Part shown: piece by piece, positions 1 through 56,000 of the stretch | Layout of the letters: the number at the start of each line of letters is the position of its first letter | Position numbering within the stretch: the stretch's first letter is position 1 | Assembly (NCBI RefSeq): GCF_037042905.1 | Contig: NC_087246.1 | Location: forward strand, 13,454,001-13,518,000 | Origin: Lytechinus pictus | Lineage: Eukaryota | Length of the DNA: 64,000 nucleotides | Direction of reading: 5' to 3' | Position numbers and translations under genes: made by a program | The notes under the pieces: model-generated | Database searches by the model: none | Seen by the model: the letters and a program-made list of their open reading frames with translations, nothing else | Told to the model about the DNA's origin: nothing

Positions 1-261
1 GTATACAATGTAAAATGCATGTTTGAAGAAGATCAAGATATGTGTGTCGAAGAAGCGTCAAGCTTCTATCATTTTGACCTTCGAAAAAACGATATAAAAT
101 CCCATTTAAAGGCAAAACTGAAAGAAATGTAATGGTCCAGAGAACTTAATGTGAATTCTACAAAATTTGATTTTTTTACTTGTCTCTCCCCCTCCCCTTG
201 GATATTGTGATGCTTATTTAACTAATTTTTGGTTCAAAACCAAAAGAGCCATCTTGAAATA

Positions 262-520
262 TTACTTTGATTTTTCTGATGTTTAACTTTATTGAACAAC
301 CTGTAAAGACATTTATTTGTTAGAATGATTTTGTTGTTGTTGATTTTCTGATGTTTAACTGATATTGAATAACCTGTAAAGACATTTATTTGTTAGAATG
401 ATTTTGTTAGTATGCAACTGCCAAAAAGACAAATATCAATTTTGAATCTAAAACCAAAAGAGCTATCTTGATATATTACTTTGATTTTCTGATGTTTAAC
501 TTTATGAATAACCTGTTAAA
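262..520. repeat. Short degenerate tandem repeat (~80 bp unit)
   Basis: TTTTCTGATGTTTAACT...AACCTGT(A/T)AA occurs three times, the first two continuing GACATTTATTTGTTAGAATGATTTT. Confidence 0.7.
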
Positions 521-991
521 AATGTTTTCCAGTCAGTTAGGATTGGTTTATTTTTCAACCTATCCTTTGTTAGTATACAACTGGTAAAAGATGATAATCA
601 ATTCTTTGTACTTTAAACAGAATTTCATTTATGTTTTCTTAATTTCGTTTGTATATGCACATATTTGGTTATTTTCCTTTGTTAATATTTTGTTTTAAAC
701 GCTGATTTCTTCCTTGCATTATCAGTAAATTTATTCGAGACAAAACATTTAATTAAGTATGAAATAATCTTTTCTTTGCAAAATTATTTAAAGTTTGTAT
801 AAAAAAAAGGGGGAAAAAGAAAATCAGGCCGAATTTAATAAGTTGTTATATCATGTTTAATCAGAATAACGTTGATCTTAAAACACTGAAGAAGAAAACA
901 GGGTATGTTTTTTGTTGTTGTTTAAAATGTTTTGATCATTTTTTTATGTTTATCAGTGTACATTTCATTTTGAGAATTTGGTTAATACATA

Positions 992-1330
992 ACCTCTATC
1001 AAGACCAAGAGCACCACAATCATCCATGAGCCACCATCTAGCTACCACTCCATACTCATCGTGTACTCCTGTGGTTGTACCAGTACCAACATTCAACCAC
1101 GCGCTTCATTCATCATCGTCACCACCCATGTTCGGGGTCTACCCTCATCATGATCAACCCATCCATGTTACGATGTCGTCAATGAAGGTCCGTTCTACAA
1201 GGAATCGACGATCACGCCGAGTGGTAATCAAGGATGAGGAAGAGGAGATCATCGACGTCGTATCGCTCTGAAGAATATGGACTTTGTTTTGATGTGGTAC
1301 ACTTGGATAATGTATTTGAGATTTGAAGTC
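992..1330 (+). pseudogene. 5'-truncated fragment (copy 1) of the zinc-finger-less Sp5-like gene
   Basis: Homology to exon 2 of the other copies starts abruptly at ACCTCTATCAAGACC (~992), runs through the stop at 1271 and ends at ~1330 before the polyA signal. No exon 1, promoter or Sp box. Confidence 0.85.
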
Positions 1331-1944: not shown

Positions 1945-3036
1945 GATTTGTGTCTTATTTTAGAAGGATATGAATTCTTATTTCCTTTTCCATCATTTGC
2001 ATCTCTTTCCTTCTTCCTTTACTTCATCATTTCTTTTTTTTCTTCCCTTTCTCTCCCTTTCCCCTCCCTTTTCTTTCACCTCTCCCTTTACATCTCCCTT
2101 TTGTGGGGGGGGGGGGGGTGGAACCAGGCCCCTTCAGCCCCCAAGGATCCCCAAAACACTTACGATGAGGCGGCATATGATAAAAAGGTTGCGTGTTATT
2201 TGATATAAATACAATTTTGAATATTTTGATATTTTTGAACACAATTTTCATGCATAGAATGGGCTGACAATTTTGGGATATAATTTTTGTATGTAGCCTT
2301 AAGATGTTTAAGGTGGTCAAAAGGGGAGGGGATATCAAAGGAAAAATATAAGCATTATAAAGAGAGAGCTTTCTGAAAGTATCAGTCATCAAAGAAGAAA
2401 AAAGGCCAATACATCTTCGTGAAATCGTAACATTATATTGTACTGAACTATTAATGACCTTGTACAAAAGTTTAACATAGGCTTTAAATCTCTAATTACA
2501 GATTTTCCTTCGTTATTATTTTTTTCAGCTGCAGAATTACCCCCACCTCTGATTCATTGTTCAGGGGCTTCCAAGAAACAACACATTTAGTCAATTCATT
2601 TCAAATTGTTTAAAGGGACATTATCACGGACGTAACAGAAGTTATACTAAAATAAAAAGTTTCTAAATAGATGAATATTTGCCACTCGAATATAGAAATT
2701 TCTTGTTTCAACAGGAATCTATTTGTGATAGAAATTCTATAGGACCCACTGAAAAAAATCTAGTATAATGATTTAGAGCAATCCACTTCATATACGTTTT
2801 TTACAGGCATTTTTTAAAAGTATCGTAATAAGTCTTTACTAAAGATGCTGTTACTATGTGTTCGTTCATATTCTTTGATGTATTAATAAAATAAATAAGT
2901 ATTCTGTGACTACTTAATCGAAATATGGCAATTTTGTGTCGAAAGTAACCATATCACTCTGTAACCTTTATGGACTAAAGAAAATCCCATCGAGATGGAT
3001 TGAGTACCCTAAAATAGACTTTGACTATAATTTCCC

Positions 3037-3559
3037 ATCCTACCTGTTAACAGTGTAGATCTATTCATTGATAAGTGTCACCCAGCTGGAGTATTCTTCT
3101 TTCTATTGCATTCTTACCTCCATGTCACTATTCAAAGCCGAGAGATGACCCGTCCGTTGTGACTGGTGAACGACCTGTCATTGATAAGCATCGGACAATG
3201 CCCGAAGATCCTCCTATTGGTCAGACTTTGTGATGGTTGAACTTGACAGATAGAAGCCCGGGATTAGCGGCATAGGATCAAGATCAGATGGATCTCTGAT
3301 CTTACCGGCTCATTGAGTCGTCCAGTGGTAGATGAAAGGATTCATGAACGAGTTTGGTCAGTTAGGATAAATAGCTATCAAATTCTCGACATAGCATCAT
3401 TTATGCTTTGAGCTTTCGCCAGTGCACAACTACTACAACTAACCCTGGACACTATCATTATTGGTCATCATTACTTCAGTTTATAAGAGTATATCATTAC
3501 AACTATACATCTTGGCATCTGTCTTGGACTTGATTTAAGTGGAATATTATATTGGCAGC
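3037..3559 (+). promoter_or_regulatory. Conserved proximal promoter/5'UTR of the Sp5-like genes
   Basis: About 520 bp shared by all three intact copies (also ~16258-16784 and ~20807-21349), while copy 4 diverges further upstream. Contains TGATAA x2, CAGCTG, ATTGG, GGATTA, an AAGATCAGA-N6-TCTGATCTT inverted repeat and TATA-like GATAAATA. Confidence 0.6.
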
Positions 3560-4454
3560 ATGGCTTCTCTGACTTCAAAGTACTTACAGGTATGTACACA
3601 TAGACATTAATTGTCGTTTCTCTCTTACAATATCAAATCTTACTTCTTTGGTTTCTCAAACAAGCTCAACTAAATGAAACTGTACAATTGTATAATAAAT
3701 ATTTAAAGCGTAGTGTGTTTGATAATGAGTCATGACATGAAGTGTATGGATATTTCGGTCTCATTGAATTAATTTTGATTTCTCCCTCTTTTCTTTAATT
3801 TCTCAGCTCCCTGAAGCTAGCTCGTGTGATATTGGCAAACCAAGTCCCCTGGCCATGTTAGCTGCAACCTGTCGAAAGATTGGCACATCACCAGGCGTGT
3901 CTTCCCGTCGAGTGCCGAGGATACTTTCACTACAACCACAGCTCACTCCCTTGTCGACGACCTCGTCTGCTTCTACATCGTCGTCCTGTTCGTATCTTCC
4001 ACCTACTCCACCACCGTCACCACACATGACCTCGTCATCTCCAGCGTTGTCGGTATCACCTCAGCCTACCGAGTTGTCATCTCTCCGATCAGTTAGCCCG
4101 ATCATCCCTGGTCATCAGCCATGCTACTATCCTCTATATCAACCTGTTATGCGGTATTCTCCTTACTCTACTACACCTCTATCAAGACCAAGAGTACCAC
4201 CCTCATCCATGAGCTACCATCTAGCTACCACTCCATACTCATCGTGTACTCCTGTGGTTGTACCAGTACCAACATTCAACCACACGCTTCATTCATCATC
4301 GTCGCCACCCAAGTTCGGGGTCTACCCTCATCATGATCAACCCATCCATGCTAAGATGTCGTCAATGAAGGTTCTTTCTACGCGGAATCGACGATCACGC
4401 CGAGTGGTAATCAAGGATGAGGAAGAGGAGATCATCGACGTCGTATCGCTCTGA
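3560..4454 (+). CDS. Sp5-like Sp-box protein lacking zinc fingers, copy 2 (225 aa); exons 3560-3589 and 3807-4454
   Basis: Exon 1 MASLTSKYLQ ends CAG|gtatgt; 217-bp intron with polypyrimidine tract ends ctcag; phase-0 exon 2 LPEASSCDIGKPSPLAMLAATCRKIG...IKDEEEEIIDVVSL*; AATAAA at 4536. Resembles vertebrate Sp5 N-terminus SLQAFLQ|DRTPSASPDLGKHSPLALLAATCSRIG (from memory). Confidence 0.85.
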
Positions 4455-6085
4455 AGAATATGGACTTTGTTTTGATATGGTACACTTGGATAATATATTT
4501 GAGATTTGAAGTCGCTTGTAGCGAACTCATGTTGAAATAAATCTTTTCGAAAATGCATTTCTTGTCTTAAAAGGACTTTAACTTTGGAGTCAAGCTGTTT
4601 GACTTCGAAAGAGTTAAGATAGGCGATGGGTTGCATTTGCTTGTATGTTTAGTGAGACAGTATCATATTGAGAGAGAGAGAGTGCATGAGGGGACGAGAA
4701 GAGGAAGACGAAGCACTGTGAAATATTTACTTAGTGTGAAAAAAAGTTTAATAAGTGAGGCATTGAGTGAGGGGGTAGTTCAGCAAGATATTTTGTTTGA
4801 TCCTTGATAAAGAGCGGAAGATATTTTGAAAAAAAAATCATTCACATAAATAGAAGAATGCTAGTCACTTCCTTCAGTGTTTAGAATTCAGATGGAACAT
4901 ATTTTTAAAATCATTTCTTTATTGTAAAAATAGCAGAAAAAAATATTTTCTTTTATTCAGTGTTCACTTCCCCTTTAAGATTTGTGTCTTTTCCAACATT
5001 TGCATCTCTTTCGAGTTTGAGTTTGAAAGTAAATAAGCTTGGTGAGTTCTATATAGACTCATCCAGGGAAATGAATAAATGAGGACCAGTGTAAATGATG
5101 GTTTTCTATTTAAATAATATTCTCAACAAAGGAAGGTAAAATGATGGTAATTGTCTTGTGGAATAACCATGAAAATTATCTTTTTATTTGTAAATAATAA
5201 ACTTAAAAGGGTTGGCAATTCACCGCGATTTAATTAGTATATAAAACAGCCAAGACAAAGATGATATAAGTCATTTATTTTCAAAATAATATTAAAGTAA
5301 AAAAGTTAAGCTGTGGAAACTAATCTATCTTCGTGACTTATAATTCTTATCATACGCTTTTGAATTAGCAATAGTCTGTCCAAATAAATTCTAGATCAGT
5401 TATCCCAATAATGATGAAATTAAAAAGGACATTTTTAGTTGTCAGGTTAGAATATAAAAAAAATTCAGCTCGCGCTTCTCATTCGCATAAAAACTGTCAG
5501 GACAGGATGCGTATATAACTAAACAATTGATCCGAATGCGAAGCACGAGCTAAAAATGTTTGATATTCTAACCTGACAACTGGAAACTTTTAGCATGTTT
5601 TAAAATAAACAAATAGCTGTGTATCTCGCGAATCAAGTAATACGAGCACAAAGCACGAGCTGGAATATTCTTTTTATTCCTATCAGAAAATTTGAACTTT
5701 TAAGCACGTTTTTAGATAAAGAACAATTTGTTTATCTCAATGAATGATTAATGCGAGCCCAAAGCGCAAGGTGAAATTTAATTGTACTGACCAGAAGTGG
5801 GAACCTTTTGAGCACTTTTTACCATGGAGGAAAATTGTTAAGAGAATACGTATCTCACTAATGATGAGAATTCAAAGCAAGGGCTAACTATTTTAAGTTA
5901 TCATGAACAGAATACATAAATACGATAAAATGCAAATACAATGCTTATGTGCAAGTTAAAAAAAATCCATATACTCAGGGGCAGATCCCGCTTTCGCCAA
6001 TGGGGGAGGGGGTGGGAGTTGGCAGAAAAATATTTTCATTTACATTTTACCCGATTGGACACCAAAACCTGTTTTTTGCCCTTCT

Positions 6086-9382: not shown

Positions 9383-11557
9383 GTGTTGTTATCGTATTAT
9401 ACTGATGATTCGATGTTGCAACCGCAAAGTGTAAGCGCGCCACCTTGTGTTGGTCTCTTGGCCACATTATTTTACGATGGTTGTGAACTTTGGTTTGATG
9501 GTGTGGTAGTCCAAGATGATTACTTGAGAGGTTCTTGTAGCATTGTTGCTGGGGCTCCATTCATGGAGCAGAACGATATTTCGGTTCGCCCCTCCAAGCA
9601 GTTGATCATGTTTGGAGACGGTGCTACTTTCTGCTATGGTGTGTCATCTAGAGCAGCTCCGCCGTGTTTGTATGATGTTGATCTCGCTGGCATACATACG
9701 GTTACGAATCTCATTCTAAATGATCAGGAACGCGAGAAAAATGAGAGTCCAATTGATGATAGTCATGGAATTCATAATCATGTTACATTAAGGACCACAG
9801 TCATACCAGTAAACACTAACATACACAAAGAAGATGATGGATATGAGACGAGTGATAGTGAGATAGATGAATCTGAAAGTAATGATTGTAAATCTCGGAA
9901 TGAAGACCGAAGAGATGAGACTAGTGATGGTGAGGTGCATGAAACTAACAAAGGTGAAATGACACCATGCAATGTAGATGATGGTTATGAGAGTAGTGAT
10001 GGTGGAGGTAATGACTCTAACATAGTTCATGTGAAACAATGTAATGCAGTTGATGGATACATGAATTGTGATGGTGAGGTGAAAATATTAACAAACAGTG
10101 CTGACATGAAAGGATGGAATGAAGAGGTTGACTATGCAACTAGTGATAGTCTGGTTCATGAAAGTGACCAATGTGATGTGAAACAATGGAATGAAGAAAT
10201 TGGATATGAAGCTAATGTTGATGTGGTTGATAAAGCTAATGGAGATGATGTGCTTATTGGTCACATGAGAGATGTAAAAGAAACAAGGAAAGATAATGTA
10301 GGGTCTATTGTTAGTGATGTAATTGGTCAGGATACCGATGCCAATGTGCCTTCATTGTTCCAAGAGTGTACAGTTACAGACACTTATGAAAGCAGTTCAT
10401 GCTCTCCTCCAGTTTTACGTTTGAGTGATTTCAGAACTTCTTCACTCCATTGCATTGATTGTTGGCATGGTAATATTGCCTTTACTACTCTGAGTGGATT
10501 GAGTTGCTCTCCACTTTCTGCCGATGAGTTTGAGCCTTTGGTAATTTGGGATTGTTGCCAATCCAATGTGACCTGCAGTTTTACAGAGTCCCTTGATTTG
10601 GATCCTAGTCAGAACCATGGTCCTTGCTTTTTGTCAGATGTGACAATTTCACCTAACATGACTTTGCCTGATGTAACAGTTTTGCCTAACTTGTCTTTGC
10701 CTGATGTGACAGTTTCGCCTACCTTGACGTTGCCGGATGTGACAATTTTCCCTAACATGACTTTGCCTGATGAGACAGTTTTGCCTAACATATCACTCGA
10801 TATGCTACTGGATCGCTGCATAGGTAGCAACCTTGTCGTTGACCGTGGAGGTACCGTACTGCCTCTTGATCACATGTTTGACACTTCTAGTAGTGTTGAT
10901 ACTGTGTCCGTTACACCATCGGCCGATTCGGTGTTACCCTTCAACGCGAGTAACCGCCACAGAGCAAACACCGGGGTAACCGCTATGCCTCCGTGCCAGG
11001 CTAACGTCAGCAGCAGTAGCTCTACTACGCAAGTTATCCGTCCGGCGCGGGTACAATGTTTCGTGAACGGGTTGATCCCGCAGAGCTGTAAGTCGTTCAT
11101 CCCGCCAGCATCGTATCCTACCGAATGTAAGCACTCACCTAGCATCCCAGTCTCTAATAGCCATGTTCATTCAATCCGGACTGGTGTCGCTCCTCGTACT
11201 CGCCCTCCAAATCAGCCCCTTGCTACCCTAGAGCTTGGTCCTGCTGATCTGTCTGTCCTTGAAGGTGTTCATCATTGTCGTCCTCCAGATCAGCCCCATG
11301 CTATACCAGGGCATTGTCCTGCTGATCTGTCCAACCCTGAAGGATGTCTTCACACTCGTCCGCCAGACCGGCCCCATGCTACTCCAGGGTATGGTCCTGC
11401 TGGTCTGTCTATCCCAGTGGTAAAGTTTCATAGACCGTATGATGTTGGTCCCTACCTAGGACTTTTCTTCATGATTCTCGCCTATCAACGCTCCAGAGAC
11501 ATTTATTGTTTGATACAGTGTTCGCTCGCCTTGCTTTCAAGACCTATGATTACGTAG
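9383..11557 (+). CDS. 724-codon ORF of the LTR element: Gypsy protease-like C-terminal fragment followed by acidic and tandem-repeat regions
   Basis: FDGVVVQDD...IVAGAPFMEQNDISVRPSKQLIMFGDG resembles the end of Gypsy aspartic protease domains; then DDGYExSD repeats, 11-aa LPDVTVxPNxT repeats and 26-aa RPPDQPHA repeats; no RT, RNase H or integrase motifs. Confidence 0.55.
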   Translation: MLLSYYTDDSMLQPQSVSAPPCVGLLATLFYDGCELWFDGVVVQDDYLRGSCSIVAGAPFMEQNDISVRPSKQLIMFGDGATFCYGVSSRAAPPCLYDVDLAGIHTVTNLILNDQEREKNESPIDDSHGIHNHVTLRTTVIPVNTNIHKEDDGYETSDSEIDESESNDCKSRNEDRRDETSDGEVHETNKGEMTPCNVDDGYESSDGGGNDSNIVHVKQCNAVDGYMNCDGEVKILTNSADMKGWNEEVDYATSDSLVHESDQCDVKQWNEEIGYEANVDVVDKANGDDVLIGHMRDVKETRKDNVGSIVSDVIGQDTDANVPSLFQECTVTDTYESSSCSPPVLRLSDFRTSSLHCIDCWHGNIAFTTLSGLSCSPLSADEFEPLVIWDCCQSNVTCSFTESLDLDPSQNHGPCFLSDVTISPNMTLPDVTVLPNLSLPDVTVSPTLTLPDVTIFPNMTLPDETVLPNISLDMLLDRCIGSNLVVDRGGTVLPLDHMFDTSSSVDTVSVTPSADSVLPFNASNRHRANTGVTAMPPCQANVSSSSSTTQVIRPARVQCFVNGLIPQSCKSFIPPASYPTECKHSPSIPVSNSHVHSIRTGVAPRTRPPNQPLATLELGPADLSVLEGVHHCRPPDQPHAIPGHCPADLSNPEGCLHTRPPDRPHATPGYGPAGLSIPVVKFHRPYDVGPYLGLFFMILAYQRSRDIYCLIQCSLALLSRPMIT

Positions 11558-13110: not shown

Positions 13111-16100
13111 CAGACAACTCTTTGATTCATTGACGTCTTGAAAGTCATAGTATTCTTTTAGTATCCCGTAAGTATCCTTTTCAAATCTTAAAAACCTTAA
13201 TAAAGAGCAATTTAGCTATCGTCATTCGATTTGGAAGTAGAACTGACAGTTCGTACATATTGTGATGAGGTATATAGACAAATAATCTTTATTTCCCGTA
13301 CCTCTTCCATTTTGTAATAATATGCGATTTCTTTCGTCATTCTAAAAGATTGACAGTTAAGTTTTTCTTGTATTTGTAAAGAAAAATCAAAATTTTTTGG
13401 AAAAAGTTTGATTGCTAATGAGAATACTTTATTGTAATGTTAAAAGTATATATGTAGATTTGAGAGAATACTGCATGAGAGTAATTACGGAATATCGAAG
13501 TGAAAAATTGTGGCTTTCTTTAAAATTTCACAAGTTTATTTGTTAAATTTAATGTCTCCCCTTGCATTACCTGCTCATAATGAATTTCTCATTTACTGTG
13601 GGGGGGGGGGGGGGGAGCTTTCTTGGGATTCATTTGATTGTTTATATATTATGGTTTTGAAAACTCAATCCTTAATCTTTAAAAAGACCCAGAGCTATCA
13701 TGTAACAACAACAACTTTAATAATACAACAAGTTGATAGGAATTAATATAAATTGTTTCTGATCGTTGGATGATACTCGACTATTAATTACCCTGTAACA
13801 AAATTTTACGAAGGCTTTAAATTATCTTTCTATATTATTTTTCACTGAGCAGCAGACATACCCCCACCTCTGATTCATCGTTCAAGGGCTTTCAAGAAAC
13901 ACTATAAAAGCAATCGGTAGGCCTACCAAAATTGATTGAAGAGATACATTACCACGGTAAGTAATAAAACTTATATTTAAATAAATAGTTTCTTATAAAA
14001 CAGAGGTTTGCCATTTGAATGTAGGAATCCCTTATTGGGACAATAATTCATTATCATTTTTAATAGATATTCAATAAGACCCACTTTGAAAGATATAAGA
14101 ATAATATTTTAGAGGAAAGATACCCCATGATGTGTTGTTTTTATAGGCAATTTAAAAGCATCGTAATTAAACATACTTTAAGATGTTGCCACTTGGCGTT
14201 TGATATTTTAAAAAAGGTTATTAGATTAATTTATTTTAAATTTGTGACACCATATGCGAGCAACTTCCCCATATATATTGTAGTAAAAAAATAATTAAAT
14301 GTCATTTTCTAACGAAAGAAAATGCTTTTTATTGTACCTTAAGAACATAAGCTGACATTTTCTTCCCCAGCTTCTGAAATATTATTTTGGGGCATCATGC
14401 TCGTGTACCATTAAAATTGAAATATATGCGTTTCATATTCCATAACATATGGGTAGCTGCCCATATATGAGATCACAGTGAAAATTCGAATTCTAATAAT
14501 TTTTTTAATCTTTAATAGATTTACTTAAACTTTAAGCAATATTCTTTGCATGTTTCAAAGGTATTTTTACAAAAGAAAACACATTTTTCAGGGTGAACTT
14601 CCCCGATTTATGTCTCTCTCTCTCTCTTTATAACGAATTGTATTTTTATTTCCTCTCATCTCCTTTCCCTTCCTTTTCTTTCAACTGGTTGGCCGATCGA
14701 AGATATAAGTTGGAAGTTCACCCTGACAATTTTTTTATTGTACAAATGGCAGGAAAATGATCAAGAATATTAAAGGTTTGACGAAAATTCATCAAAATAA
14801 CGAAAAAACCCACCAAAGTTAATAGAATGGCACTTAAACACAAATTGTGACGTCATATATCTTTTGGTAGGAAAATGAATGAAATATCATTTTCTAAAAA
14901 AATAAATGAAAATGCTTTGTTGGCACTTTATACATAATAGCTGACATTTTTTTTCACCCCCATTCAAACAAATATTTTAGTCATCATGAACCATTAAATG
15001 TAAATTATGGATTTTATATTACAATATGGAGTAGCTGCTCGTATATGAAGTCAAATTAACAAATTTAAACTCTAAAAACTTACGTAATCTTTTATGGATT
15101 TTTCCTCAAACCTTCCCCAATATTTCTATTTTTTTATTCAGGGTGAACTTCCGCTTTAAGATTTGTGTCTTATTTTAGAAGGATATGACTTCTTATTTCC
15201 TTTTCCATCATTTGCATCTCTTTCCTTCTTCCTTTACTTCATCATTTCTTTTTTTTTCTTCCCTTTCTCTCCCTTTCCCCTCCCTTTTCTTTCACCTCTC
15301 CCTTTACATCTCCCTTTTATGGGGGGGGGGGGGTGGAACCAGGCCCCTTCAGCCCCCAAGGATCCCCAAAACACTTACGATGAGGCGGCATATGATAAAA
15401 AGGTTGCGTGTTATTTGATATAAATACAATTTTGAATATTTTGATATTTTTAAACACAATTTTCATGCATGGAATGGGCTGACAATTTTGGGATATAATT
15501 TTTGTATGTAGCCTTAAGATGTTTAAGGTGGTCAAAAGGGGAGGGGATATCAAAGGAAAAATATAAGCATTATAAAGAGAGAGCTTTCTGAAAGTATCAG
15601 TCATCAAAGAAGAAAAAAGGCCAATACATCTTCGTGAAATCGTAACATTATATTGTACTGAACTATTAATGACCTTGTACAAAAGTTTAACATAGGCTTT
15701 AAATCTCTAATTACAGATTTTCCTTCGTTATTATTTTTTTCAGCTGCAGAATTACCCCCATCTCTGTTTTATTGTTCAGGGGCTTCCAAGAAGCAACACA
15801 TTTAATCAATTCAATTCAAATTGTTTGAAGGGACATTATCACGGACGTTACAGAAGTTATACTAAAATAAAAAGTTTCTAAATAGATGAATATTTGCCAC
15901 TTGAATATAGACATTTCTTGTTTCAACAGGAATCTATTTGTGATAGAAATTCCATAGGACCCACTGAAAAAAATCTAGTATAATGATTTAGAGGAATCCA
16001 CTTCATATACGTTTTTTACAGGCATTTTTTAAAGTATCCTAATAAGTCTTTACTAAAGATGCTGTTACTATGTGTTCGTTCATATTCTTTGATGTATTAA

Positions 16101-16784: not shown

Positions 16785-17649
16785 ATGGCTTCTCTGACTT
16801 CAAAGTACTTACAGGTATGTACACATAGACATTAATTGTCGTTTCTCTCTTACAATATCAAATCTTACTTCTTTGGTTTCTCAAACAAGCTCAACTAAAT
16901 GAAACTGTACAATTGTATAATAAGTCATAATATGTAGTTTATGGATATTACGGTTTCATTAAACTAATTTTGATTTCTCCCTCTTTTCTCTATTTTTTCA
17001 GCTCCCTGATGCTAGCTCGTGTGATATTGGCAAACCAAGTCCACTGGCCATGTTAGCTGCTACCTGTCGAAAGATTGGCACATCACCAGGCGTGTCTTCT
17101 CGTCGAGTGCCGAGGATACCTTCACCACAACCCCAGCTCACTCCCTTGTCGACGACCTCGCCTGTTTCTACATCGTCGTCCTGTTCGTATCTTCCACCTA
17201 CTCCACCACCGTCACCACACATGACATCGTCATCTCCAGCGTTGTCGGTATCACCTGAGCCTACCGAGTTTTCACCTCTCCGATCAGTTAGCCCGATCAT
17301 CCCTGGTCATCAGCCATGCTACTATTCTCTATATCAACCTGTTATGCGGTACTCTCCTTACTCTACTACACCTCTATCAAGACCAAGAGTACCACCATCA
17401 TCCATGAGCTACCATCTAGCTACCACTCCATACTCATCGTGTACTCCTGTGGTTGTACGAGTACCAACATTCAACCACACGCTTTATTCATCATCGTCAC
17501 CACCCATGTTCGGGGTCTACCCTCATCACGATCAACCCATCCATGCTACGACGTCGTCAATGAAGGTCCGTTCTACAAGGAATCGACGATCACGCCGAGT
17601 GGTAATCAAGGATGAGGAAGAGGAGATCATCGACGTCGTATCACTTTGA
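16785..17649 (+). CDS. Sp5-like Sp-box protein lacking zinc fingers, copy 3 (225 aa); exons 16785-16814 and 17002-17649
   Basis: MASLTSKYLQ|LPDASSCDIGKPSPLAMLAATCRKIG; 187-bp GT-AG intron; intact frame; AATAAA at 17745. Confidence 0.85.
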
Positions 17650-21349: not shown

Positions 21350-22244
21350 ATGGCTTTCCTGACTTCAAAGTACTTACAGGTATGTACACATTGACATTAA
21401 TTGTCGTTTCTCTCTTACAATATCAAATCTTACTTCTTTGGTTTCTCAATCAAGCTCAACTAAATGAAACTGTACAGTTGTATAATAAATATTAAAAGCG
21501 TAGTGTGTTTGATAATGAGTCATGACATGAAGTGTATGGATATTTCGGTCTCATTGAACTAATTTTGATTTCTCCCTCTTTTCTTTCATTTCTCAGCTCA
21601 CTGAAGCTAGCTCGTGTGATATTGGCAAACCAAGTCCACTGGCCATGTTAGCTGCAACCTGTCGAAAGATTGGCACATCACCAGGCGTGTCTTCTCGTCG
21701 AGTGCCGAGGATACCTTCACCACAACCCCAGCTCACTCCCTTGTTGACGACCTCGCCTGTTTCTACACCATCATCCTGTTCGTATCTTCCACCTACTCCA
21801 CCACCGTCACCACACATGACCTCGTCATCTCCAGCGTTGTCGGTATCACCTCAGCCTACCGAGTTGTCACCTCTCCGATCAGTTAGCCCGATCATCCCTG
21901 GTCATCAGCCATGCTACTATCCTCTATATAAACCTGTTATGCGGTACTCTCCTTACTCTTCTACACCTCTATCAAGACCAAGAGTAAAACCATCATCCAT
22001 GAGCTACCATCTAGCTACCACTCCATACTCATCGTGTACTCCTGTGGTTGTACCAGTACAAACATTCAACCACACGCTTCATTCATCATCGTCACCACCC
22101 ATGTTCGGGGTCTACCCTCATCACGATCAACCCATCCATGCTACGATGTCGTCAATGAAGGTTCGTTCTACAAGGAATCGACGATCACGCCGAGTGGTAA
22201 TCAATGATGAGGAAGAGGAGATCATCGACGTCGTATCGCTTTGA
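21350..22244 (+). CDS. Sp5-like Sp-box protein lacking zinc fingers, copy 4 (225 aa); exons 21350-21379 and 21597-22244
   Basis: MAFLTSKYLQ|LTEASSCDIGKPSPLAMLAATCRKIG; 217-bp GT-AG intron; ends INDEEEEIIDVVSL*; AATAAA at 22340. Confidence 0.85.
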
Positions 22245-38000: not shown

Positions 38001-41000
38001 GAGTAAATCTCACAGGAGGTTGCCACTTGGGAGAAATAGCTGGAATCGAGTGTTTACAAGATAATGGTAATTCGAACTCAGTCATCTTCAATAAGAATTA
38101 AAAATTGATGCATTTGTATACAAATTTTCATGTAGCATTAAAATGCAAATGAAAAAATAAAAAAACCCAGAAAAACATATACGATCTAAGCGCATTGCCT
38201 ATTTCTCAGACTTTGTGTGAGTAAAATTTATATTCATGAATGATGCATTTAATCATCGAACGAGGAGCCTTCCGCTATAAATGTTGAATAAATCAATCGA
38301 TAAATCATCGTGGCAACATCAGTCTATTGTGGCTGTTTCCCATTTCTTTTTCTCCTTTCCCCTTCCATCATGTTCATAGAATACGATTTTAGCCATTGAT
38401 GTCAAAGGCAAGTGTCCATAACAAATTTTATGTCGTATTAATAAACAAATGAAAATTGAAAAAAAAACAGAAAAACTTATACGATCTCAGTGCATTGCCT
38501 ATTCATCAGACTTTCTTTGACTCAAATAAAACATTCCTGATTGATGCATTTAATCATCGAACGAGCCTTCCGCTATAAATGTTGAATAAATCAATCGATA
38601 AACTATCGTGGCAACATCAGTCTATCATGGCTGTTTTCCATTTCTTTTTCTCCTTTCCCCTTTCATCATGTTCATAGAATACGATTTTAGCCACTGATTG
38701 ATGCATTTAATCATCGAACGAGGAGCCTTCCGCTATAAATGTTGATCAGTTGGTAAATTGCCAATTCGTCCACTGCCAACTCGTCCACTCACTACATGGT
38801 CCACCTTCATTTAGTTTAATGCCATTCCGTCCACAAACATTTAGGCTAACAACAATTTGGTCCAATAACCATTTGGACCAATCATCATTTCGTCTAATCA
38901 TAAGTTGGTCTATTACCATTTCGTATCATAACCAGTTGGTCTAATACTCGTTTTATTTTCATTCATTTTGCCCAATTAACACTTAGTCCAATCAGACCAA
39001 ATGGTATATGGACTAAATAGCTATTGGACCAACTAGTTATTATACGAAATGCTGAGTGTACGAAATGGCAATGAGACCATGTGGATATTGGACGAACTGT
39101 AGACAAGTTGTCAATTGGACGAATTGGCATTTGACCACATGAAAATAAACCGATTAGTTGATAAATGATCGTGGTAATAGCAGGCTTTGATGTTGTCAAT
39201 GTCTGTTTCTCCTTTTTCCTATCATCATGTTCATGGAATACAGTTTTAGCCAATGATGGCAAAGGCAAGTGTCCATTAAGAGGTTATTAATTTAATCAAA
39301 TGACTGACGACGGCAGTTATGAGACGATTATAGGTAAATAATTCGAATAATGAAAAAAAATTGATCGAGAAAATGAGCTACATGTATATTATTCCCTTAA
39401 TGGCAAAATAACAACATTGAGGCAGTGGCTTGAGATATAAATAGTAATTTAGTTATCATTAAAGAAGTTAATTATAAATCTGATTTTCGTTTCACCTCTT
39501 TTTTTATAGGAGATGTGTGTATTCCTGGCTTGTGTCATGGGGACAAAGATATGGAAGGTAAGATTTACGTTTCTTCAAGTTTATATAGTGAGGTTTTATT
39601 TTCATTTTCCTTCATATTTCAAATCAGGTTTATTTTATTTTTATTTTTACTTTATTTTATTTCATTTCCAGGTACACATACTCATAACAATAGTCAAATT
39701 CATTACATTGAAAATAATCATCATACAACATCCAATATACAATATCAAATAAAAATAAACACTCAAGAAAACATCAGCGAATGCCTGGTGATTATCAAAA
39801 GAAATCAAGTTTCTGTTAAAAGACTCTCCTCATTAGCTGGTACTAAAAAAAGAACATTAACATTAAAATACAGTTCAACAAATAACAAATAAAAATGACA
39901 TTTGAATACATAATTTNNNNNNNNNNNNNNNNNNNNNNNNNNNNNNNNNNNNNNNNNNNNNNNNNNNNNNNNNNNNNNNNNNNNNNNNNNNNNNNNNNNN
40001 NNNNNNNNNNNNNNNNNNNNNNNNNNNNNNNNNNNNNNNNNNNNNNNNNNNNNNNNNNNNNNNNNNNNNNNNNNNNNNNNNNNNNNNNNNNNNNNNNNNN
40101 NNNNNNNNNNNNNNNNNNNNNNNNNNNNNNNNNNNNNNNNNNNNNNNNNNNNNNNNNNNNNNNNNNNNNNNNNNNNNNNNNNNNNNNNNNNNNNNNNNNN
40201 NNNNNNNNNNNNNNNNNNNNNNNNNNNNNNNNNNNNNNNNNNNNNNNNNNNNNNNNNNNNNNNNNNNNNNNNNNNNNNNNNNNNNNNNNNNNNNNNNNNN
40301 NNNNNNNNNNNNNNNNNNNNNNNNNNNNNNNNNNNNNNNNNNNNNNNNNNNNNNNNNNNNNNNNNNNNNNNNNNNNNNNNNNNNNNNNNNNNNNNNNNNN
40401 NNNNNNNNNNNNNNNNNNNNNNNNNNNNNNNNNNNNNNNNNNNNNNNNNNAAATGAAAACTTTATTTACAAATTATAATCACAAAAGTCAGGTATATAAT
40501 AAAAGAATAGTTTGACATAAACATTCAAATGAGATCAGGTTGATTACAAGCACAGAGTTATAAAACCAAATGTTAAATGAGCCATGCAATGCTGCCCTCG
40601 TTAATTGTAAAAAGTAATCTATTCATACACCATTTACGTAAAAAGGCATCAATATTAGAACATAATTTGTAATAAGTAAATTCATAGAGTATTCTGTTTT
40701 TGAGACGATGTAACCAAATAATAAGTGGATCGGTGAAATTTGAGGTACGGTACATAAAATAAATGGTACTTTTTAAACTAATAATAAGAAAATTAGCAAG
40801 CCGGATAACCTTTCTGTCACGCCCTCTGGCATGCGGAATGAGTGCCCAGTATAGGTCAAAATTAAGTTTGAGAGAGGGGAGGAGATTGTTCAACAGTCTA
40901 TGAAGAAGATTGAGAGAAGGTTGGATTCCTTTACATTCGATGAACAGATGTTGAATGGTTCCTAGTTCTCCGCACCATCCGCAAAAAGAAGAAATGTCTG

Positions 41001-44000
41001 TATTAAGATGATGGAGTATAGTGAGCGACGGTAAAATATTGTGAAGGAGTCTGTATTGAATATCAGCCTCTTTTTTAGGTGTTGGTAATTGATAGATAGA
41101 TAGCCAGTTCACTTTTGTAGATGGATCGAGAAATCCAGTATCATGCCAATGTGAGCTTGATAAGATTGTCGTATTATCTAGTTCTTTCCTGTAGATTCTG
41201 TAGATAGCTTTAGAAGAAGCAATAAGTCCATTTTCGGAAGAAGCCAGAGTGAAGTTGATCGGAGTAACTGGAGCAGACAATAGATCAGAGTATTTGTGTT
41301 GACAGCCTGAGTCATTAAAATATGTAGGGAAAACTTTAGAGAGTGCAGTTCGAATGAGTAATGTTTCACGTTCGATGAGACGCGATGATGGTTGTCGAAG
41401 TCCTCTTGGAAAGTTCTTTTGAAGACAGCTACTCTCAATCCAAAGACCAGTTGAGTGGTTTATCAAATGGCGAACTAGTTTCACTCCGCATGCCATCAGG
41501 CGCGTCGGAAAAAAATTATCAACATCAATTGCATCAATAATATGAAAACTATTTAAGGGCATGTTAATTGCATGGCTGAAAGAGAGGGATTGTGTCACAA
41601 TTCGAGCTCCAGATGTCAACCAAGCTCGCAGAACTTCACTATAGTAAACTGGAAGACTTGTGTAAAACTTAGGATCAATTCTTGTAAAGAACAATTGGTA
41701 ATCAAATCCTAATTTACAATACTGTCTCAGAAAATGAGCCATAAAGTCGTTTACTGGATGAGAATTTAAGGAAAGAAACCGTTGAATAATCGAAAATCTG
41801 TAAGTTAGAACACGAGCTTGGAGACAAGCTAGCCCCAGCCCTCCTTCGTCAGGTTTTTCATACAACACTTCTTTCTTTAACCAGTGCCGCTTATTTGACC
41901 AGATAAAATTCACAATTAAATTCTGAAGTTCGTTTAATACATTTTCAGGAGGAGAAAGAACTGCAAGAACATGAAATATTTTTGATGCAGCGAGCTGGTT
42001 TGCAATCAATACCTTGCCTTTAAATGAGAGTGAGTTCGATAAACGAGACCACGAAATGAAAGTCTTATTAAGTCTTTCTTTACATTTAATCCAGTTTTGT
42101 TTAGAATAATTAAACGTGTTCCCTAAATGAACTCCTAAAAAGGGGAGACCTTCACTATTCCAAGAAAAGTTGAGGGGTTTATCATTCCGCCCTTTCCAAC
42201 GGCCGACCCAAAGGCCTTGTGATTTTTTTGTATTTAAACATGCAGCAGAGGCCAGACTAAACATATTGTAAGTTTGTTCAACTAATTCAAAGCCAGCATC
42301 GGCTGTGACAAATATCGATACATCGTCTGCATATGCAGATACTACACAAGGTTTGTTAATAGCAGGGATATTTAATGCATGATTTGACACGTTCTCTCTT
42401 AGTGAGTTCAGGAGAGGCTCAATGGCGAGAGTATATAGCAACCCTGATAGAGGGCATCCCTGTCGTATTCCTTTCTCAAAGGGGAAAGGAGCTGTCAGGG
42501 ATCCACACACTTTAATGAGGCTTTCAGCCCCTTCATACAAAATTCGTATATAGGATATAAAATGACTTCCAAAGCCCATGCGTTTCATAACATTGAATAA
42601 ATAAACGTGATCTACATTATCAAATGCCTTTTTCTGGTCCAAGTTCAATACAGCCAAAGAAATATTATCAGTGTTTGCATAGAACAAAATATCTCTAATG
42701 AGATTAATGTTGTCATAAATAGAACGACCGGGGATACAATAACTTTGGTCTCTTCCAATAACATGATCAATGCATGATTTTAGCCTACTGGCAAGCAGCC
42801 TAGCAAAAATTTTATAGTCTGTGTTGAGGAGGGAGACGGGACGCCAATTTGAAATATCAGCGAGGTCTCCTTTTTTGGGGAGTAAAGTAATGACCGCCCT
42901 CCTAAAGGAGTATGGTAAAAATCCAGATTCAAGAGAGGAGGTAAGAACTTCGAGAAAATCATCTTTGAGCATGGGCCAAAAGACATGATAAAATTCAGAG
43001 GTAAGTCCATCGATACCAGGAGACTTATTTTTACCTAGCTGCTTGACAGCATTATCAAGTTCTTCTACGGATATTGGATTCTCAAGGTCCTTTGATAAGG
43101 ACGGATCAAGCGTTTTGATATTTACAAGTAAACTATTGATGGCGCTTTTGTCAGTTGGCTTTCGAGTGTAAAGAGATTCATAAAAATCCCGAACATGATT
43201 TTTTATCTCAGAAGGGTTCTCCGAAATACGTCCCGAAGCGAGCCGAATGCGGGATATACTTTTTGATAAGGAATTCGTTTTTTCTAAGTTGAAGAAAAAA
43301 TTGGAGCATGAGTCTGTTTCATTTGTGTATTTAAAGCGAGACCTCACAAGAGCTCCGCGTGCTTCATTTTTCAGTAACGAGTTTAATGCATTTCTATGCT
43401 CGTCGAGAGTATATTTATCTTGTGGGCTAGATTCTTTTGCGCTCTGAAGTTTATCAATCTCCTTGTTAATTTCTATGAGAGCTTGCCTTTTCCTTTGTAC
43501 TATTTTTTTACTATACATTTGAGTAATTGATTTTATATGAACCTTTCCGAAATCCCACCAAGATGCAAGATTCGGGAAGTCATTTCTTTCTTTTTGCCAA
43601 TCTGACCAAAAAAGACGAATAATATCAATGTAACTTTCGTCTTCCAAAAGGGTGTTATTGAAAATCCAATATGCACTTTTTCCTTTAGCCCGTATTGGGA
43701 ATTTCAAAGTAAGAGAAACTGCAGAGTGGTCAGATAAGGAACAAGGTATAATTTCACACGTATGAATAGAAGAAACTAGACACGATGGTACATAAAATCG
43801 ATCTAATCTAGACTTTGAAAAGCCATGTGCACTGGCTGGATTGTGCCGTTGCCAGGTAAATTTCTTTTCATTTGGATTTAGAAAACGCCATGCATCGCAA
43901 AGAGAAGATTTATTCAGAACATTTTGCAAAGCCGTAACAAGTTTAGGTCTGCGTTCTGTGAGCGTGCACAAACGATCAATGGCAGGATTTTCAGTGCAAT

Positions 44001-53000: not shown

Positions 53001-56000
53001 AGTGTAATGTTATTCAACTTGTGAATTGAACGATGTATTTATGCCAAGACATTCCTTTTCAATGGCCCGTAGATTATTTTTCTTATTTAGGCATAAAAAT
53101 CCCATTAAGCGATAAACATACTTTTTTTTTATTTAAACTTTATACCAAAATTGGATGAGATCAAATCTCTGTTAAACATTTGGAATGGTAGATCTCTTAC
53201 ATTGTATGGAAAGATAGTAGTAATAAAAACATTGGTCATTCCAAAACTAATATATCTTTTAAGCATTATTTAAGACCCACCACCGACCTTCTTTATCGAA
53301 ATGCAACAGCAATTATTTAATTTTTTATGGAGTAAAAAAGGTGATAGGATTAAGCGTTCTCTTTTATACAATGACTACAAAGATGGTGGTCTAAAAATGT
53401 TACATTTGTCATGTTTTAATCAAGCACTTAAAGTATCATGGGTCAAAAGATTTTTAGATGATGATAACAATGGGAAATGGAAGTGTTTATTTTTAAGAAT
53501 CTGTTCGTTTCATTGGTGAGAGCAAATTTACGATTTGGAATATTAGCAAAAGTCATATATTATTCAATCCATGTACCGAAACTTTTTGGAATGATGTATT
53601 GAGTTCATGGTCATATTACAGATACTATAATCCTGTTAAGTTTAAGGAAATACTGTCGCAACCTCTGTGGTTCAATTCACACATTCTATTTGATGGAAAA
53701 CCTCTTTATATTCAAAGATGGTCAGAATCTTCTTTAAACACTATTTACGATTTTCTAACAGAAGATGGACTTTTTAAGTCTTTTGAAGTTATAGTTAAAA
53801 ACTACGGTTACACATCCATCATGATGTATAAATCATTATTATCTGCCATACCAAATGAATGGAAAAGAGTTATTAGAAAAAAATACATAAAACAGAATAC
53901 ACCTTTTGAACCATACGACGATCGATTACGTAATTTCCTTAAACACAAAAAAGTTTCTAAACTATGTTATTCTCATTTTATAAATAATTATACTTTGGAC
54001 GTGTCAGAGACAGATCAACGTTACAAATGGGAAAACGATCTTTCACTGCAATTATCAAATAATGAAATTTGGAATTCTCGTTTTACCCTGATATACAAAT
54101 CGTCAATAGATAACAAACTAAGGAATTTCCAATTTAAATTTATACACAGAAAAGTGTCGACAAATCGTTATTTATATAAAATCGGAATTTTTTATCAAGA
54201 CATATGTGATTTTTGTAATGAACAAAATCAAACATTGATGCATCTGTTTTTTGAATGCCAATTTGTTTCGAACTTTTGGAACGATTTGTGTACTTGGTTG
54301 ACTTTAAAAAATATCCGTTCTTATAAGTTATCTAATTTAGAAATTTGTTTTGGAACATTGGAAAGAGAACATTTTTATTTGGTAAATACCATAATACTAT
54401 ACGGCAAATATTTCATTTTTTCATGCAAATATAGTAAAACAATTCCTCTTTTTAAATCGTTTCTATGTACTCTAACACAGTTAGAAAAAACAGAACGCTA
54501 CATTTCTTTTAAACATAATCGTTCGGAGTTTCACAGAAAAAAGTGGAATATTATTACTATGAAAGAGTAAAGGGCATAGATCTATTTTTTGTTGTTTTGA
54601 ATTAGATCTGTTGTATATTACTTTAACCTAGCATGGTGTCTATCTATATGAATGTAATAGAATCATGTATCTGTTTCTGAGATATTTTTGTTAAAATGTG
54701 AATTGCAAATAAAACTCATTAAAAAAAAAAAAAAAAAAAAACATATTTCTATTTTTCAGGGACTTGAGTTACAATCCCCTATTTCATATAGACGACAATT
54801 CACTTGGAAACTTGTGGAACCTTGAATATCTGTAAGTAGTACCTTTCATGATTTTCAATTGAAATAGAGTAAATACCTTTCCTAATAATTCTCGGATTGG
54901 TCTCTACATCTACTCCAAGACACATACATTTTATGCAATCAGACATCATTATGCTATTTAGATGGATATGTAAGAGAGAGAGAGAAAGAGAGAGCGAGAG
55001 AGAAAGAGAGAGGGGGGAGATCTCGGATGCAACAGTTCAATGTTGCCTGACATACACTACAGCATGTTAGCATACAATACCTACATTCACGATCATATCT
55101 TTTTTCAGTTGATTAGAGAGAATGGCATATAACGAGATGTAACACGAGGGTATTGGAGTGCACTGAGTTGCTTATAAGAACACTTGAGTCGTTTGAAGTG
55201 AGAATCAGATTTAAACGTAATTCATACTATTTCTCAAGGTCTTGCTAATATCCTGGCTGTGGCTTTGGTCTAACAATGTAATATAAAGACACTCTGAGCA
55301 TACATTATGACCTTGTGACAGGGTTGAAACGTATTTGAAAATGTAGTTTGTGATTTTTTTAACTTGAAGTTCAGCCATGGTCACTCTTATTCCCTCTTCA
55401 GGTTTCTTATTGACATATACCTACCATCTTTGGAAGCAGGTATAGCGCATAACCTGTCTTCTCTGACAGCCGTGTAAGTTTATTTTTCTTTTACATATTT
55501 CTGTGATGAATAACAACAATGTGCGAAGAATTTGTTGACATTATCTATTAAAAATAATGAACCATAATCCTAGGTCTGTTCGACTATTGAGGATATGCAG
55601 ACATTTTCAATGAACCAATAAATTTATTGTCGTGTGTAAATAAATGATTTTTTTCTGGATGGTGTTCATCCGGCTTACGATGACCGCTCTTAAGGGAGAT
55701 AAAACAGATATTATGTAAATGTGTAACTTAAAGAACACACATGACGTCTCATTTTTTGCAACAAATCCTAATTTATAATGTGTTTTGCATGTATCATATT
55801 GCAGGAGATGCAGTATTTTGATAACAAAATATTTTGTTCGTTCATTTTCATCTGATAGATCCGCATCAGATAGTAGGATATGCTGTCTTGTATCGCGTGA
55901 GATGAACAATGTCAGCTGTGCCATGACAGCTCCCAAAAGTCCGTTGGACACGTGCGGTAGACTCTATCCAAACGTCGTGCTAAGAATCTTTGGCTGGATC

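What the first reader, a model, noticed from the sequence alone, without database searches (positions are those of the whole stretch)
4380..4454. Near-invariant C-terminal module RNRRSRR-VVIKDEEEEIIDVVSL in place of the DNA-binding domain
Seen: DEEEEIIDVVSL is identical in all four copies although the middle of the protein varies. Known: MYC box IIIb (EEEIDVVS) binds WDR5; acidic + IIDV also fits a SUMO-interacting motif; IKDE + acidic run fits a negatively charged SUMOylation consensus; RNRRSRR is NLS-like. Inference: a disordered two-headed adaptor linking an Sp-box partner to WDR5/COMPASS or SUMO machinery. These alternatives cannot be separated from sequence alone.
Basis: partly seen in the sequence, partly recalled or inferred. 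Interest (0 to 1): 0.8.

Follow-up and report, generated by a model that had tools for sequence, protein, structure and literature searches.

The report
Ancestral Sp5 tail on fingerless copies
The conserved acidic ...EEIIDVVSL ending of these sea-urchin proteins is not a new module: it is the old C-terminal docking motif of the Wnt-pathway factor Sp5, kept under strong selection in transcribed tandem copies that have lost the zinc fingers, and it fits the published consensus for binding the chromatin scaffold WDR5, though no binding has been tested.

Summary
The sequence facts hold. RNRRSRR-VVIKDEEEEIIDVVSL ends a two-exon gene at 3560-4454, with full copies ending at 17649 and 22244 and a 3' fragment at 993-1271. 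The gene is transcribed and spliced. Identity among the four copies is not evidence, because they are recent duplicates (7% variable sites, and longer invariant runs lie elsewhere). Copy 4 also has K203N.

The real evidence comes from other species. Against Strongylocentrotus and Diadema, the last 10 codons show 4 synonymous and 0 non-synonymous changes, while the rest of the protein reaches dN 0.17 and 0.66.

The tail does not replace the DNA-binding domain. Canonical echinoderm Sp5 proteins, which have fingers, end in the same acidic E-Φ-[IVL]-D-V-[TV]-S motif and share the intron position. The fingerless genes are a single echinoid clade of Sp5 with the Btd cysteines and three fingers deleted inside exon 2. 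RNRRSRR most likely derives from the basic flank of the Btd box.

The tail fits the WDR5 WBM consensus [LIV]-D-V-[VT] exactly. It also fits SIM patterns, but only the [LIV]DV core is shared across echinoderm classes, scyphozoans and most protostome Sp5 tails. The ψKxE lysine is not conserved. WDR5 is the favoured partner, at about 0.4, and is untested. The scan noted this family before on adjacent DNA.

The parts
3560..3589 (+). Exon 1 of copy 2 (MASLTSKYLQ), followed by a phase-0 GT..AG intron at 3590-3806
   Evidence: Sequence. The splice joint 3589|3807 is seen in 6 stranded RNA reads and in contigs of two other runs. Canonical Sp5 of L. variegatus has its intron at the same place, after ...FLQ.
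3807..4454 (+). Exon 2 of copy 2: 215 codons plus the stop. It encodes a disordered, S/P-rich, fingerless Sp5 derivative.
   Evidence: ORF. RNA coverage runs from about 3350 to 4620. AF2 gives mean pLDDT 53 and one helix at residues 14-21. No Pfam domain.
3843..3884 (+). Sp box, SPLAMLAATCRKIG
   Evidence: BLASTP to L. pictus Sp5 gives E=8e-9 over the Sp box through LPPTPP. hhalign probability is 97%.
4383..4403 (+). Basic patch RNRRSRR, probably a relic of the basic flank of the Btd box and possibly an NLS
   Evidence: MAFFT aligns SSMKV..TRNRRSRR with SSITKLAARRCRRCR of canonical Sp5, just downstream of the shared G[VL]YPHH block. An alternative BLASTP alignment exists. The reading is inferred.
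4404..4430 (+). VVIK linker and acidic run DEEEE. The lysine of the ψKxE pattern is not conserved.
   Evidence: K203N in copy 4. The lysine is absent in Diadema and other homologues.
4431..4451 (+). Terminal motif IIDVVSL. The core IDVV (4434-4445) matches the WDR5 WBM consensus.
   Evidence: D and V are invariant in 18 echinoderm tails. 0 non-synonymous against 4 synonymous changes versus S. purpuratus and Diadema. Consensus from PMC13649712.
16785..17649 (+). Copy 3: exon 1 at 16785-16814, exon 2 at 17002-17649, IDVV at 17629-17640
21350..22244 (+). Copy 4: exon 1 at 21350-21379, exon 2 at 21597-22244, IDVV at 22224-22235. It carries K203N.
993..1271 (+). 3' fragment: the last 92 codons plus the stop, with IDVV at 1251-1262. 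Homology begins abruptly at about 992.

Best explanation
What is shown. The module is the C-terminal end of a transcribed, tandemly duplicated, zinc-finger-less derivative of echinoderm Sp5. These genes kept Sp5's short first exon and its intron position. They also kept the Sp box, the LPPTPP block, the G[VL]YPHH block and the pre-Btd basic patch. The Btd cysteines and all three C2H2 fingers are missing from within exon 2. Sp5's own acidic tail, E-Φ-[IVL]-D-V-[VT]-S, now follows the basic patch directly. The tail is a short linear motif in a disordered protein. It has been under strong purifying selection since before Diadema and the camarodont urchins split.

What is inferred. The motif docks a conserved nuclear partner. 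The best candidate is the WBM cleft of WDR5, which is used by RbBP5 (EEVDVT), MYC (EEIDVV) and PER2 (IDVT). Without fingers, the proteins would act away from DNA, in one of two ways. They could act as decoys that compete with Sp5 (and possibly RbBP5 or MYC) for that partner. Or they could act as bridges between it and whatever binds the Sp box, which would tune Wnt/Sp5 output.

My confidence that this is a selected docking motif derived from Sp5 is about 0.9. My confidence that the partner is WDR5 is about 0.4. The figure given for this field is for the whole statement.
For: Orthologues and paralogues in Lytechinus, Strongylocentrotus, Diadema and unnamed ENA echinoid-like contigs all end in [ED]Φ[IV]DVVS[LIV].

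Canonical Sp5 proteins with fingers end in similar tails:
- L. pictus, L. variegatus and Diadema: ...SEDEIVDVTS[ED]
- Asterias and Patiria: ...DEILDVTS
- Holothuria: ...EEEYIDVTN
- Amphiura: ...EFVDVMS

In the joint alignment I, D and V of the tail are invariant, and the gap spans exactly the Btd box and fingers. The phase-0 intron after ...LQ is the same. The fingerless proteins form one clade (100/99) inside echinozoan Sp5.

Selection: the tail has 0 non-synonymous against 4 synonymous changes, while the rest has dN 0.17-0.66. The gene is transcribed and spliced and the protein is predicted disordered.

The tail matches the WBM consensus exactly; the ELM class LIG_WD40_WDR5_VDV_1 exists. The [LIV]DV core is present in all echinoderm tails, in 10/10 scyphozoan-like tails and in 8/10 named protostome Sp5 tails.
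Against: There are no binding data of any kind, and no complex modelling was possible with these tools.

All echinoderm tails have a hydrophobic residue (I/L/F/Y) where MYC and RbBP5 have glutamate, just before [IVL]DV. The effect of this on WBM-cleft binding is unknown.

Protostome tails have D/E rather than V/T at the fourth position, and ophiuroids have M, so the strict WBM consensus is not universal.

Vertebrate and hemichordate Sp5 lack the motif altogether, so it is dispensable for core Sp5 function.

The same tails fit SIM patterns. From my recollection of the RNF4 sequence, the echinoid Sp5 tail resembles its second SIM.

No paper linking Sp5 and WDR5 was found.
Confidence: 0.4

Rival explanations
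1. The tail is a SUMO-interacting motif. A ΦΦDΦ[VT] strand flanked by acidic and serine residues would pair with the SUMO β2 strand, so that Sp5 and its fingerless derivatives bind SUMOylated chromatin proteins.
For: The SIM patterns I used (typed from my memory of ELM's SIM classes) match 22/22 fingerless tails (parallel form), 19/22 (antiparallel form), and all canonical echinoid and asteroid tails. The hydrophobic residue before [IVL]DV, conserved across echinoderms, gives the four-to-five-residue hydrophobic core typical of SIMs. From memory, the echinoid Sp5 tail closely resembles RNF4 SIM2, and Daxx has a SIM at its extreme C-terminus.
Against: The patterns fail in holothuroid Sp5 (Y-I-D-V-T-N) and in all named protostome Sp5 tails. 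Ophiuroids pass only the antiparallel form. D and V are strictly invariant. That fits the WBM description, where the Asp makes intramolecular H-bonds and Val enters a pocket, better than it fits the looser SIM core. No binding data.
Confidence: 0.2
2. The tail is an acidic-hydrophobic docking or activation motif for some other partner, specific to Sp5 and not yet identified (for example a co-activator or a Sin3/HDAC-type co-repressor). The fit to the WBM and SIM patterns is then a coincidence of composition.
For: Outside echinoderms, Sp5 tails are long acidic stretches with repeated [IV]D[VI][DE] units. These look like generic acidic modules. Hydrozoan and anthozoan tails end in ΦNVE[NH] instead. 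A tail profile found only PHF12 (a SIN3B complex subunit) residues 175-190...DEDIIDV, at a chance-level E of 0.78. Short motifs of this composition are promiscuous.
Against: Generic acidic activation modules tolerate much sequence change. Here D-V is invariant, the whole 7-residue end is fixed over very divergent proteins (33% overall identity with Diadema), and there are no non-synonymous changes.
Confidence: 0.3
3. The free C-terminus matters. V-S-[LIV]-COOH would be a class II PDZ ligand or a C-terminal degron acquired by the fingerless family.
For: In 20 of 22 complete fingerless proteins the motif lies exactly two residues from the end, and the last residue is always L, I or V.
Against: Canonical Sp5 tails end in S, SE, SD, SN or TN, so the C-terminal hydrophobic residue is not ancestral. 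These proteins look nuclear, which fits PDZ partners poorly.
Confidence: 0.05
4. The invariance only reflects very recent duplication or gene conversion within the array, and the tail has no function of its own.
For: Within the window the copies differ at only 7% of coding sites. Longer invariant runs occur elsewhere, and the overall N:S ratio of 31:14 is near neutral.
Against: The tail is conserved across genera and orders, with synonymous changes only. It is also present in canonical Sp5 of four echinoderm classes.
Confidence: 0.02

Closest known systems
Canonical Sp5 (Sp5/Btd clade of Sp/KLF factors), e.g. L. pictus XP_054755957 and L. variegatus XP_041467394
   Same: Short first exon and phase-0 intron after ...LQ. 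Sp box, LPPTPP block, G[VL]YPHH block, basic pre-Btd patch, and the acidic C-terminal E-Φ-[IVL]-D-V-x-S tail.
   Different: No CxCPxC Btd box and no C2H2 fingers. About 225 aa instead of about 410. Position 4 of the motif is V rather than T, and the final residue is hydrophobic. The genes lie in tandem arrays in Lytechinus, S. purpuratus and Diadema.
WDR5-binding motifs (WBM, or ELM LIG_WD40_WDR5_VDV): MYC box IIIb EEIDVV, RbBP5 EEVDVT, PER2 IDVT
   Same: Exact fit to -L/I/V-D-V-V/T with an acidic N-terminal flank and a following serine. The fingerless tails carry the MYC form (IDVV). Canonical echinoid, asteroid and holothuroid Sp5 carry the RbBP5/PER2 forms (VDVT, LDVT, IDVT).
   Different: The residue just before the core is hydrophobic, not glutamate. 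The motif is at the extreme C-terminus. No binding has been shown. Protostome and ophiuroid Sp5 tails deviate at position 4.
SUMO-interacting motifs of the ΦΦD[LV]T type (PIAS, RNF4; recalled from memory)
   Same: A hydrophobic-hydrophobic-Asp-hydrophobic-[T/V] core with acidic/Ser flanks. SIM patterns match most echinoid and asteroid tails.
   Different: The match is not kept in holothuroid or protostome Sp5 tails. The strict invariance of D-V is not a SIM requirement.
DNA-binding-domain-less competitors of transcription factors (Id proteins for bHLH factors, plant microProteins; general knowledge)
   Same: A paralogue that keeps the partner-binding parts and lacks the DNA-binding part. Competition or titration is the expected outcome.
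   Different: Id proteins and microProteins work through a folded dimerisation domain. Here only short linear motifs in a disordered chain are kept, and the partners are unknown.

Membership tests
Sp5/Btd clade of the Sp family | N-terminal Sp box (S/T-P-L-x-Φ-L-x-x-x-C-x-R/K-Φ; pattern quoted in PMC4558859) | tested here: met
   SPLAMLAATCRKI at 3843-3881. BLASTP E=8e-9 and hhalign probability 97% to L. pictus Sp5.
Sp5/Btd clade of the Sp family | Btd box C-x-C-P-x-C just before the fingers | tested here: not met
   There is no CxCPxC in any fingerless protein. Only the basic flank remains.
Sp5/Btd clade of the Sp family | Three C2H2 zinc fingers | tested here: not met
   No Pfam zf-C2H2 hit. 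The alignment gap spans all three fingers. By descent this is therefore an Sp5 derivative, not a functional member of the DNA-binding family.
Sp5/Btd clade of the Sp family | Descent: groups with Sp5 in a tree and shares its gene structure | tested here: met
   The fingerless clade (100/99) lies inside echinozoan Sp5 (95/98), in a tree built on the shared columns only. The intron position and phase are the same. Long branches are a caveat.
WDR5 WBM / VDV-motif ligands | Sequence consensus -L/I/V-D-V-V/T with an acidic flank | tested here: met
   IDVV is preceded by DEEEEI in all four window copies. The consensus is met in 20/22 fingerless homologues and in 10/12 canonical echinoderm Sp5 tails. 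Consensus from PMC13649712.
WDR5 WBM / VDV-motif ligands | [quoted passage not shown] | not testable with these tools
   No complex prediction or binding assay was available. The PDB sequence search with the tail found no WDR5-ligand chains.
   22/22 fingerless tails match the parallel form. The patterns are not met in holothuroid or protostome Sp5 tails.
SUMO-interacting motifs | Binding to SUMO | not testable with these tools
   No assay or complex model was possible.
Negatively-charged-residue-dependent sumoylation site (ψKxE plus an acidic patch) | A conserved acceptor lysine in ψKxE | tested here: not met
   K is replaced by N in copy 4 and in L. pictus and S. purpuratus paralogs. There is no ψKxE in Diadema, in the class B proteins or in the ENA homologues.

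The most novel reading that the evidence does not exclude
Invertebrate Sp5, the conserved Wnt feedback factor, recruits WDR5 (and so COMPASS/MLL- or NSL-type complexes) through a C-terminal VDV/WBM motif that vertebrates and hemichordates lost. Echinoids then evolved an expressed, tandemly amplified family of fingerless Sp5 decoys. These keep the motif in its MYC-like form and compete at the WBM cleft with Sp5, RbBP5 or MYC, giving a dosage-tunable brake on Wnt/Sp5-dependent axis patterning.
Probability: 0.25. Interest if true: 0.75.

Novelty: new variant of a known kind. Interest (0 to 1): 0.55.

Why it matters
Sp5 is a conserved Wnt target and feedback regulator of axis patterning in Hydra, sea urchins and vertebrates. 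How it recruits chromatin machinery is poorly defined. None of the papers I could search described a conserved C-terminal [LIV]DV motif in invertebrate Sp5.

If the motif binds WDR5, it would connect Wnt/Sp5 output to H3K4 methylation complexes through the cleft that MYC uses.

The fingerless echinoid genes keep only short motifs and have persisted since before the Diadema-camarodont split. They offer a simple way to find what the Sp box and the tail bind: peptide pull-downs and embryo injections, with and without the tail.

Tried and rejected
- Paralogue invariance as evidence. Rejected: 45 of 648 sites vary, invariant runs elsewhere are longer, and in the 23 tail codons the 1 N: 3 S split against 30 N: 11 S elsewhere is only suggestive.
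- Pfam scan. No domain; only a sub-threshold FXR_C1 hit at E about 0.1, which I take as compositional.
- PDB sequence search with the 24-residue tail found nothing. A tail profile found only PHF12 residues 175-190 at E=0.78. The SIN3B-complex paper says nothing about that segment, so I dropped it as chance.
- ψKxE sumoylation site. Rejected because the lysine is not conserved.
- PDZ or C-terminal degron reading. Judged unlikely because canonical Sp5 tails end differently.
- Literature searches for Sp5 with WDR5, for Sp-family motif papers, and for the NCBI gene and protein identifiers of these genes. I found no description of the fingerless family or of the tail motif. Presnell et al. (PMC4558859) only remark that a few non-SP genes carry an Sp box.
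- The sample behind the ENA homologues (P0011-P0022) could not be named, because no DNA was served.
- AF2 of the monomer gives disorder, so no fold search was worth running.

Full report
**What is at the coordinates.** Window 4380-4454 is the end of a 215-codon second exon (3807-4454) on the + strand. It reads ...STRNRRSRRVVIKDEEEEIIDVVSL, then stop.

A 30-nt first exon (3560-3589, MASLTSKYLQ) is joined to it across a GT..AG intron (3590-3806). The joint is seen in 6 stranded RNA-seq reads of one run and in contigs of two other runs. Coverage runs from about 3350 to about 4620, past an AATAAA at 4536. The gene is therefore transcribed and spliced as modelled. A second raw-read run had no reads over it, so expression is not uniform between samples.

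Full copies lie at 16785-17649 and 21350-22244. A 3' fragment (the last 92 codons) lies at 993-1271. The nearest database proteins are Lytechinus pictus and L. variegatus models named 'Sp5-like', 'FLO11-like' or 'uncharacterized'.

**Checking the observation.** DEEEEIIDVVSL is identical in all four places. The rest of the module differs only by K203N in copy 4. This identity carries little weight on its own:
- The copies are 93-97% identical in DNA, intron and UTRs included.
- Only 45 of 648 coding sites vary (31 non-synonymous, 14 synonymous).
- The 31-32 nt invariant runs in the tail are shorter than invariant runs of 47-50 nt elsewhere.
- Within the 23 tail codons there are 3 synonymous changes and 1 non-synonymous change. 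That is suggestive, no more.

**Conservation across species.** This is where the weight lies. Homologues from S. purpuratus (about 70% identity), Diadema setosum (33%), a divergent S. purpuratus paralogue (33%), a second class of fingerless proteins in L. pictus and Diadema, and unnamed ENA contigs (35-40%) all end in [ED]-Φ-[IV]-D-V-V-S-[LIV]. In 20 of 22 complete sequences [LIV]DV[VT] sits exactly two residues from the end, and all 22 keep the [LIV]DV core.

Codon-level comparison of window copy 2 with the S. purpuratus and Diadema genes gives these results:

| Region | vs S. purpuratus | vs Diadema |
|---|---|---|
| Last 10 codons | 4 syn, 0 non-syn | 4 syn, 0 non-syn |
| Rest of protein | dN 0.17, omega about 0.33 | dN 0.66, dS saturated |

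The Sp box is similarly constrained (omega 0.03-0.17). The two ends are the selected parts of an otherwise fast-evolving protein. AF2 predicts that protein to be disordered (mean pLDDT 53, pTM 0.14), with the Sp box (residues 14-21) as its only helix.

**What the tail really is.** A profile search of 1.84 billion representatives found only echinoid fingerless proteins and, more weakly, bona fide Sp5 proteins. The canonical Sp5 proteins have a Btd box and three fingers, and they end in the same kind of tail:
- L. pictus, L. variegatus and Diadema: ...SEDEIVDVTS[ED]
- Asterias and Patiria: ...DEILDVTS
- Holothuria: ...EEEYIDVTN
- Amphiura: ...EFVDVMS

A joint alignment shows collinear shared blocks: SKYLQ/Sp box, LPPTPP, SPY, G[VL]YPHH and SS..K..RR. 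A single gap then covers the Btd cysteines and all three fingers, followed by the tail, in which I, D and V are invariant.

In L. variegatus the canonical gene has the same architecture: a 12-codon first exon ending ...FLQ, a phase-0 intron, and everything else (fingers and tail) in exon 2. The fingerless genes are therefore Sp5 with the DNA-binding domain missing from within exon 2. They are not Sp-box proteins that gained a new C-terminal module.

In a tree built on the shared columns, the fingerless proteins form one clade (100/99). It lies inside echinozoan Sp5, next to echinoid Sp5 and Holothuria (95/98), and has two subfamilies that each contain Diadema and camarodont members. The long branches call for caution. 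A single origin before the Diadema-camarodont split is the simplest reading. Arrays of copies also exist in S. purpuratus and Diadema.

**The basic patch.** MAFFT places TRNRRSRR opposite ARRCRRCR, the basic first half of the Btd box, a fixed distance after the shared YPHH and SS residues. One S. purpuratus copy still has a cysteine there. BLASTP instead aligns this stretch weakly (E=0.006) with the linker after finger 3. The assignment is therefore inferred. A role as an NLS is plausible but untested.

**What the tail might bind.** The published WBM consensus for the WDR5 cleft is -L/I/V-D-V-V/T. Known instances are RbBP5 EEVDVT, PER2 IDVT and MYC IDVV. In the PER2 complex the first hydrophobic residue and the Val enter two sub-pockets, and the Asp makes intramolecular H-bonds (PMC13649712; PMC10279693; ELM class).

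The fingerless tails carry IDVV. Canonical echinoid, asteroid and holothuroid Sp5 carry VDVT, LDVT and IDVT. All have the acidic flank and a following Ser or Asn.

The comparative table helps to separate the two readings. The [LIV]DV core is present in every echinoderm tail, in 10/10 scyphozoan-like Sp5 tails (NDENVDVTS) and in 8/10 named protostome tails ([DE][IV]DV[DE]). The SIM patterns fail in holothuroids and in all the protostomes. Vertebrate and hemichordate Sp5 lack the motif, and hydrozoan and anthozoan tails end in ΦNVE[NH].

The strict invariance of D-V favours a VDV-type ligand over a SIM. Two features count against a simple WBM reading. A hydrophobic residue conserved across echinoderms sits where MYC and RbBP5 have glutamate. 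Position 4 also deviates in ophiuroids and protostomes.

The ψKxE lysine is not conserved, so I reject that site. My estimates are WDR5 about 0.4, another unidentified partner about 0.3, and SUMO about 0.2.

**How it most likely works.** The fingerless proteins cannot bind GC boxes, yet they keep the two most constrained Sp5 motifs. They are expected either to titrate the partners of those motifs away from Sp5, or to bridge those partners off DNA. Their copy number gives a way to adjust dose. This step is inference from anatomy and has not been tested.

**Novelty.** I found no paper describing the fingerless genes or a C-terminal Sp5 motif. The scan had already noted the family and the Myc-like tail on adjacent DNA. 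What is new here:
- The tail is the ancestral Sp5 C-terminus.
- Cross-species selection on the tail has been measured.
- The phyletic pattern favours the VDV core over a SIM.

Noticed in passing
window 40573-46029 (- strand): Two long intact ORFs in tandem: 514 aa at 44485-46029 and 1285 aa at 40573-44430. The larger one has reverse-transcriptase-like motifs (YADD). Together they look like a young non-LTR retrotransposon. N runs at 39917-40450 and 46218-46654 bracket it.
   Followed up: no
window 52046-54570 (+ strand): Two ORFs (228 and 323 aa) that resemble the middle and C-terminal parts of another non-LTR reverse transcriptase, probably a broken element.
   Followed up: no
window 55785-56993 (+ strand): A single-exon 402-aa ORF with a rhodopsin-family 7TM domain (Pfam 7tm_1, E=1.9e-27). 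It is a GPCR gene next to the array.
   Followed up: partly
window 9383-11557 (+ strand): A 724-aa ORF with no Pfam hit lies between copies 2 and 3. An earlier scan note calls this region an LTR element, which would explain the 13.2 kb spacing between copies 2 and 3 against 4.6 kb between copies 3 and 4.
   Followed up: no
window 2027-2467 and 15317-15682 (- strand): The same ORF (MYKVINSS...) occurs upstream of copy 2 and of copy 3. The duplicated unit therefore extends well beyond the gene.
   Followed up: no
window 1-992: Homology of the 3' fragment starts abruptly at about 992. The DNA upstream is AT-rich, with repeated units of roughly 120 nt (e.g. 280-345 and 345-415). The fragment keeps an open tail reading frame, but an in-frame stop lies at 990.
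   Followed up: partly
window 16815-17001 (intron of copy 3): The intron of copy 3 lacks 30 nt that are present in copies 2 and 4 (alignment A2).
   Followed up: no
P0004 (L. pictus LOC129284289) and L003:15372: Not every array member keeps the tail. One L. pictus model ends ...VVVIKDRL. One Diadema copy has a 158-aa ORF with an unrelated end, which looks like a frameshifted pseudogene or a model error.
   Followed up: no
P0158-P0167, P0181, P0230, P0242 (cnidarian Sp5 proteins): Scyphozoan-like Sp5 tails carry NDEN[VI]DVTS followed by about 12 more residues. Hydrozoan and anthozoan Sp5 end in [LIV]NVE[NH]. A short C-terminal motif therefore seems to be an old feature of Sp5 whose form varies.
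   Followed up: partly
PDB 8bpb chain C (PHF12), residues 175-190: The only PDB chain matched by a profile of the tails is PHF12 of the SIN3B deacetylase complex (...NDVDEDIIDV), at E=0.78, which is chance level. The structure paper does not discuss that segment.
   Followed up: partly
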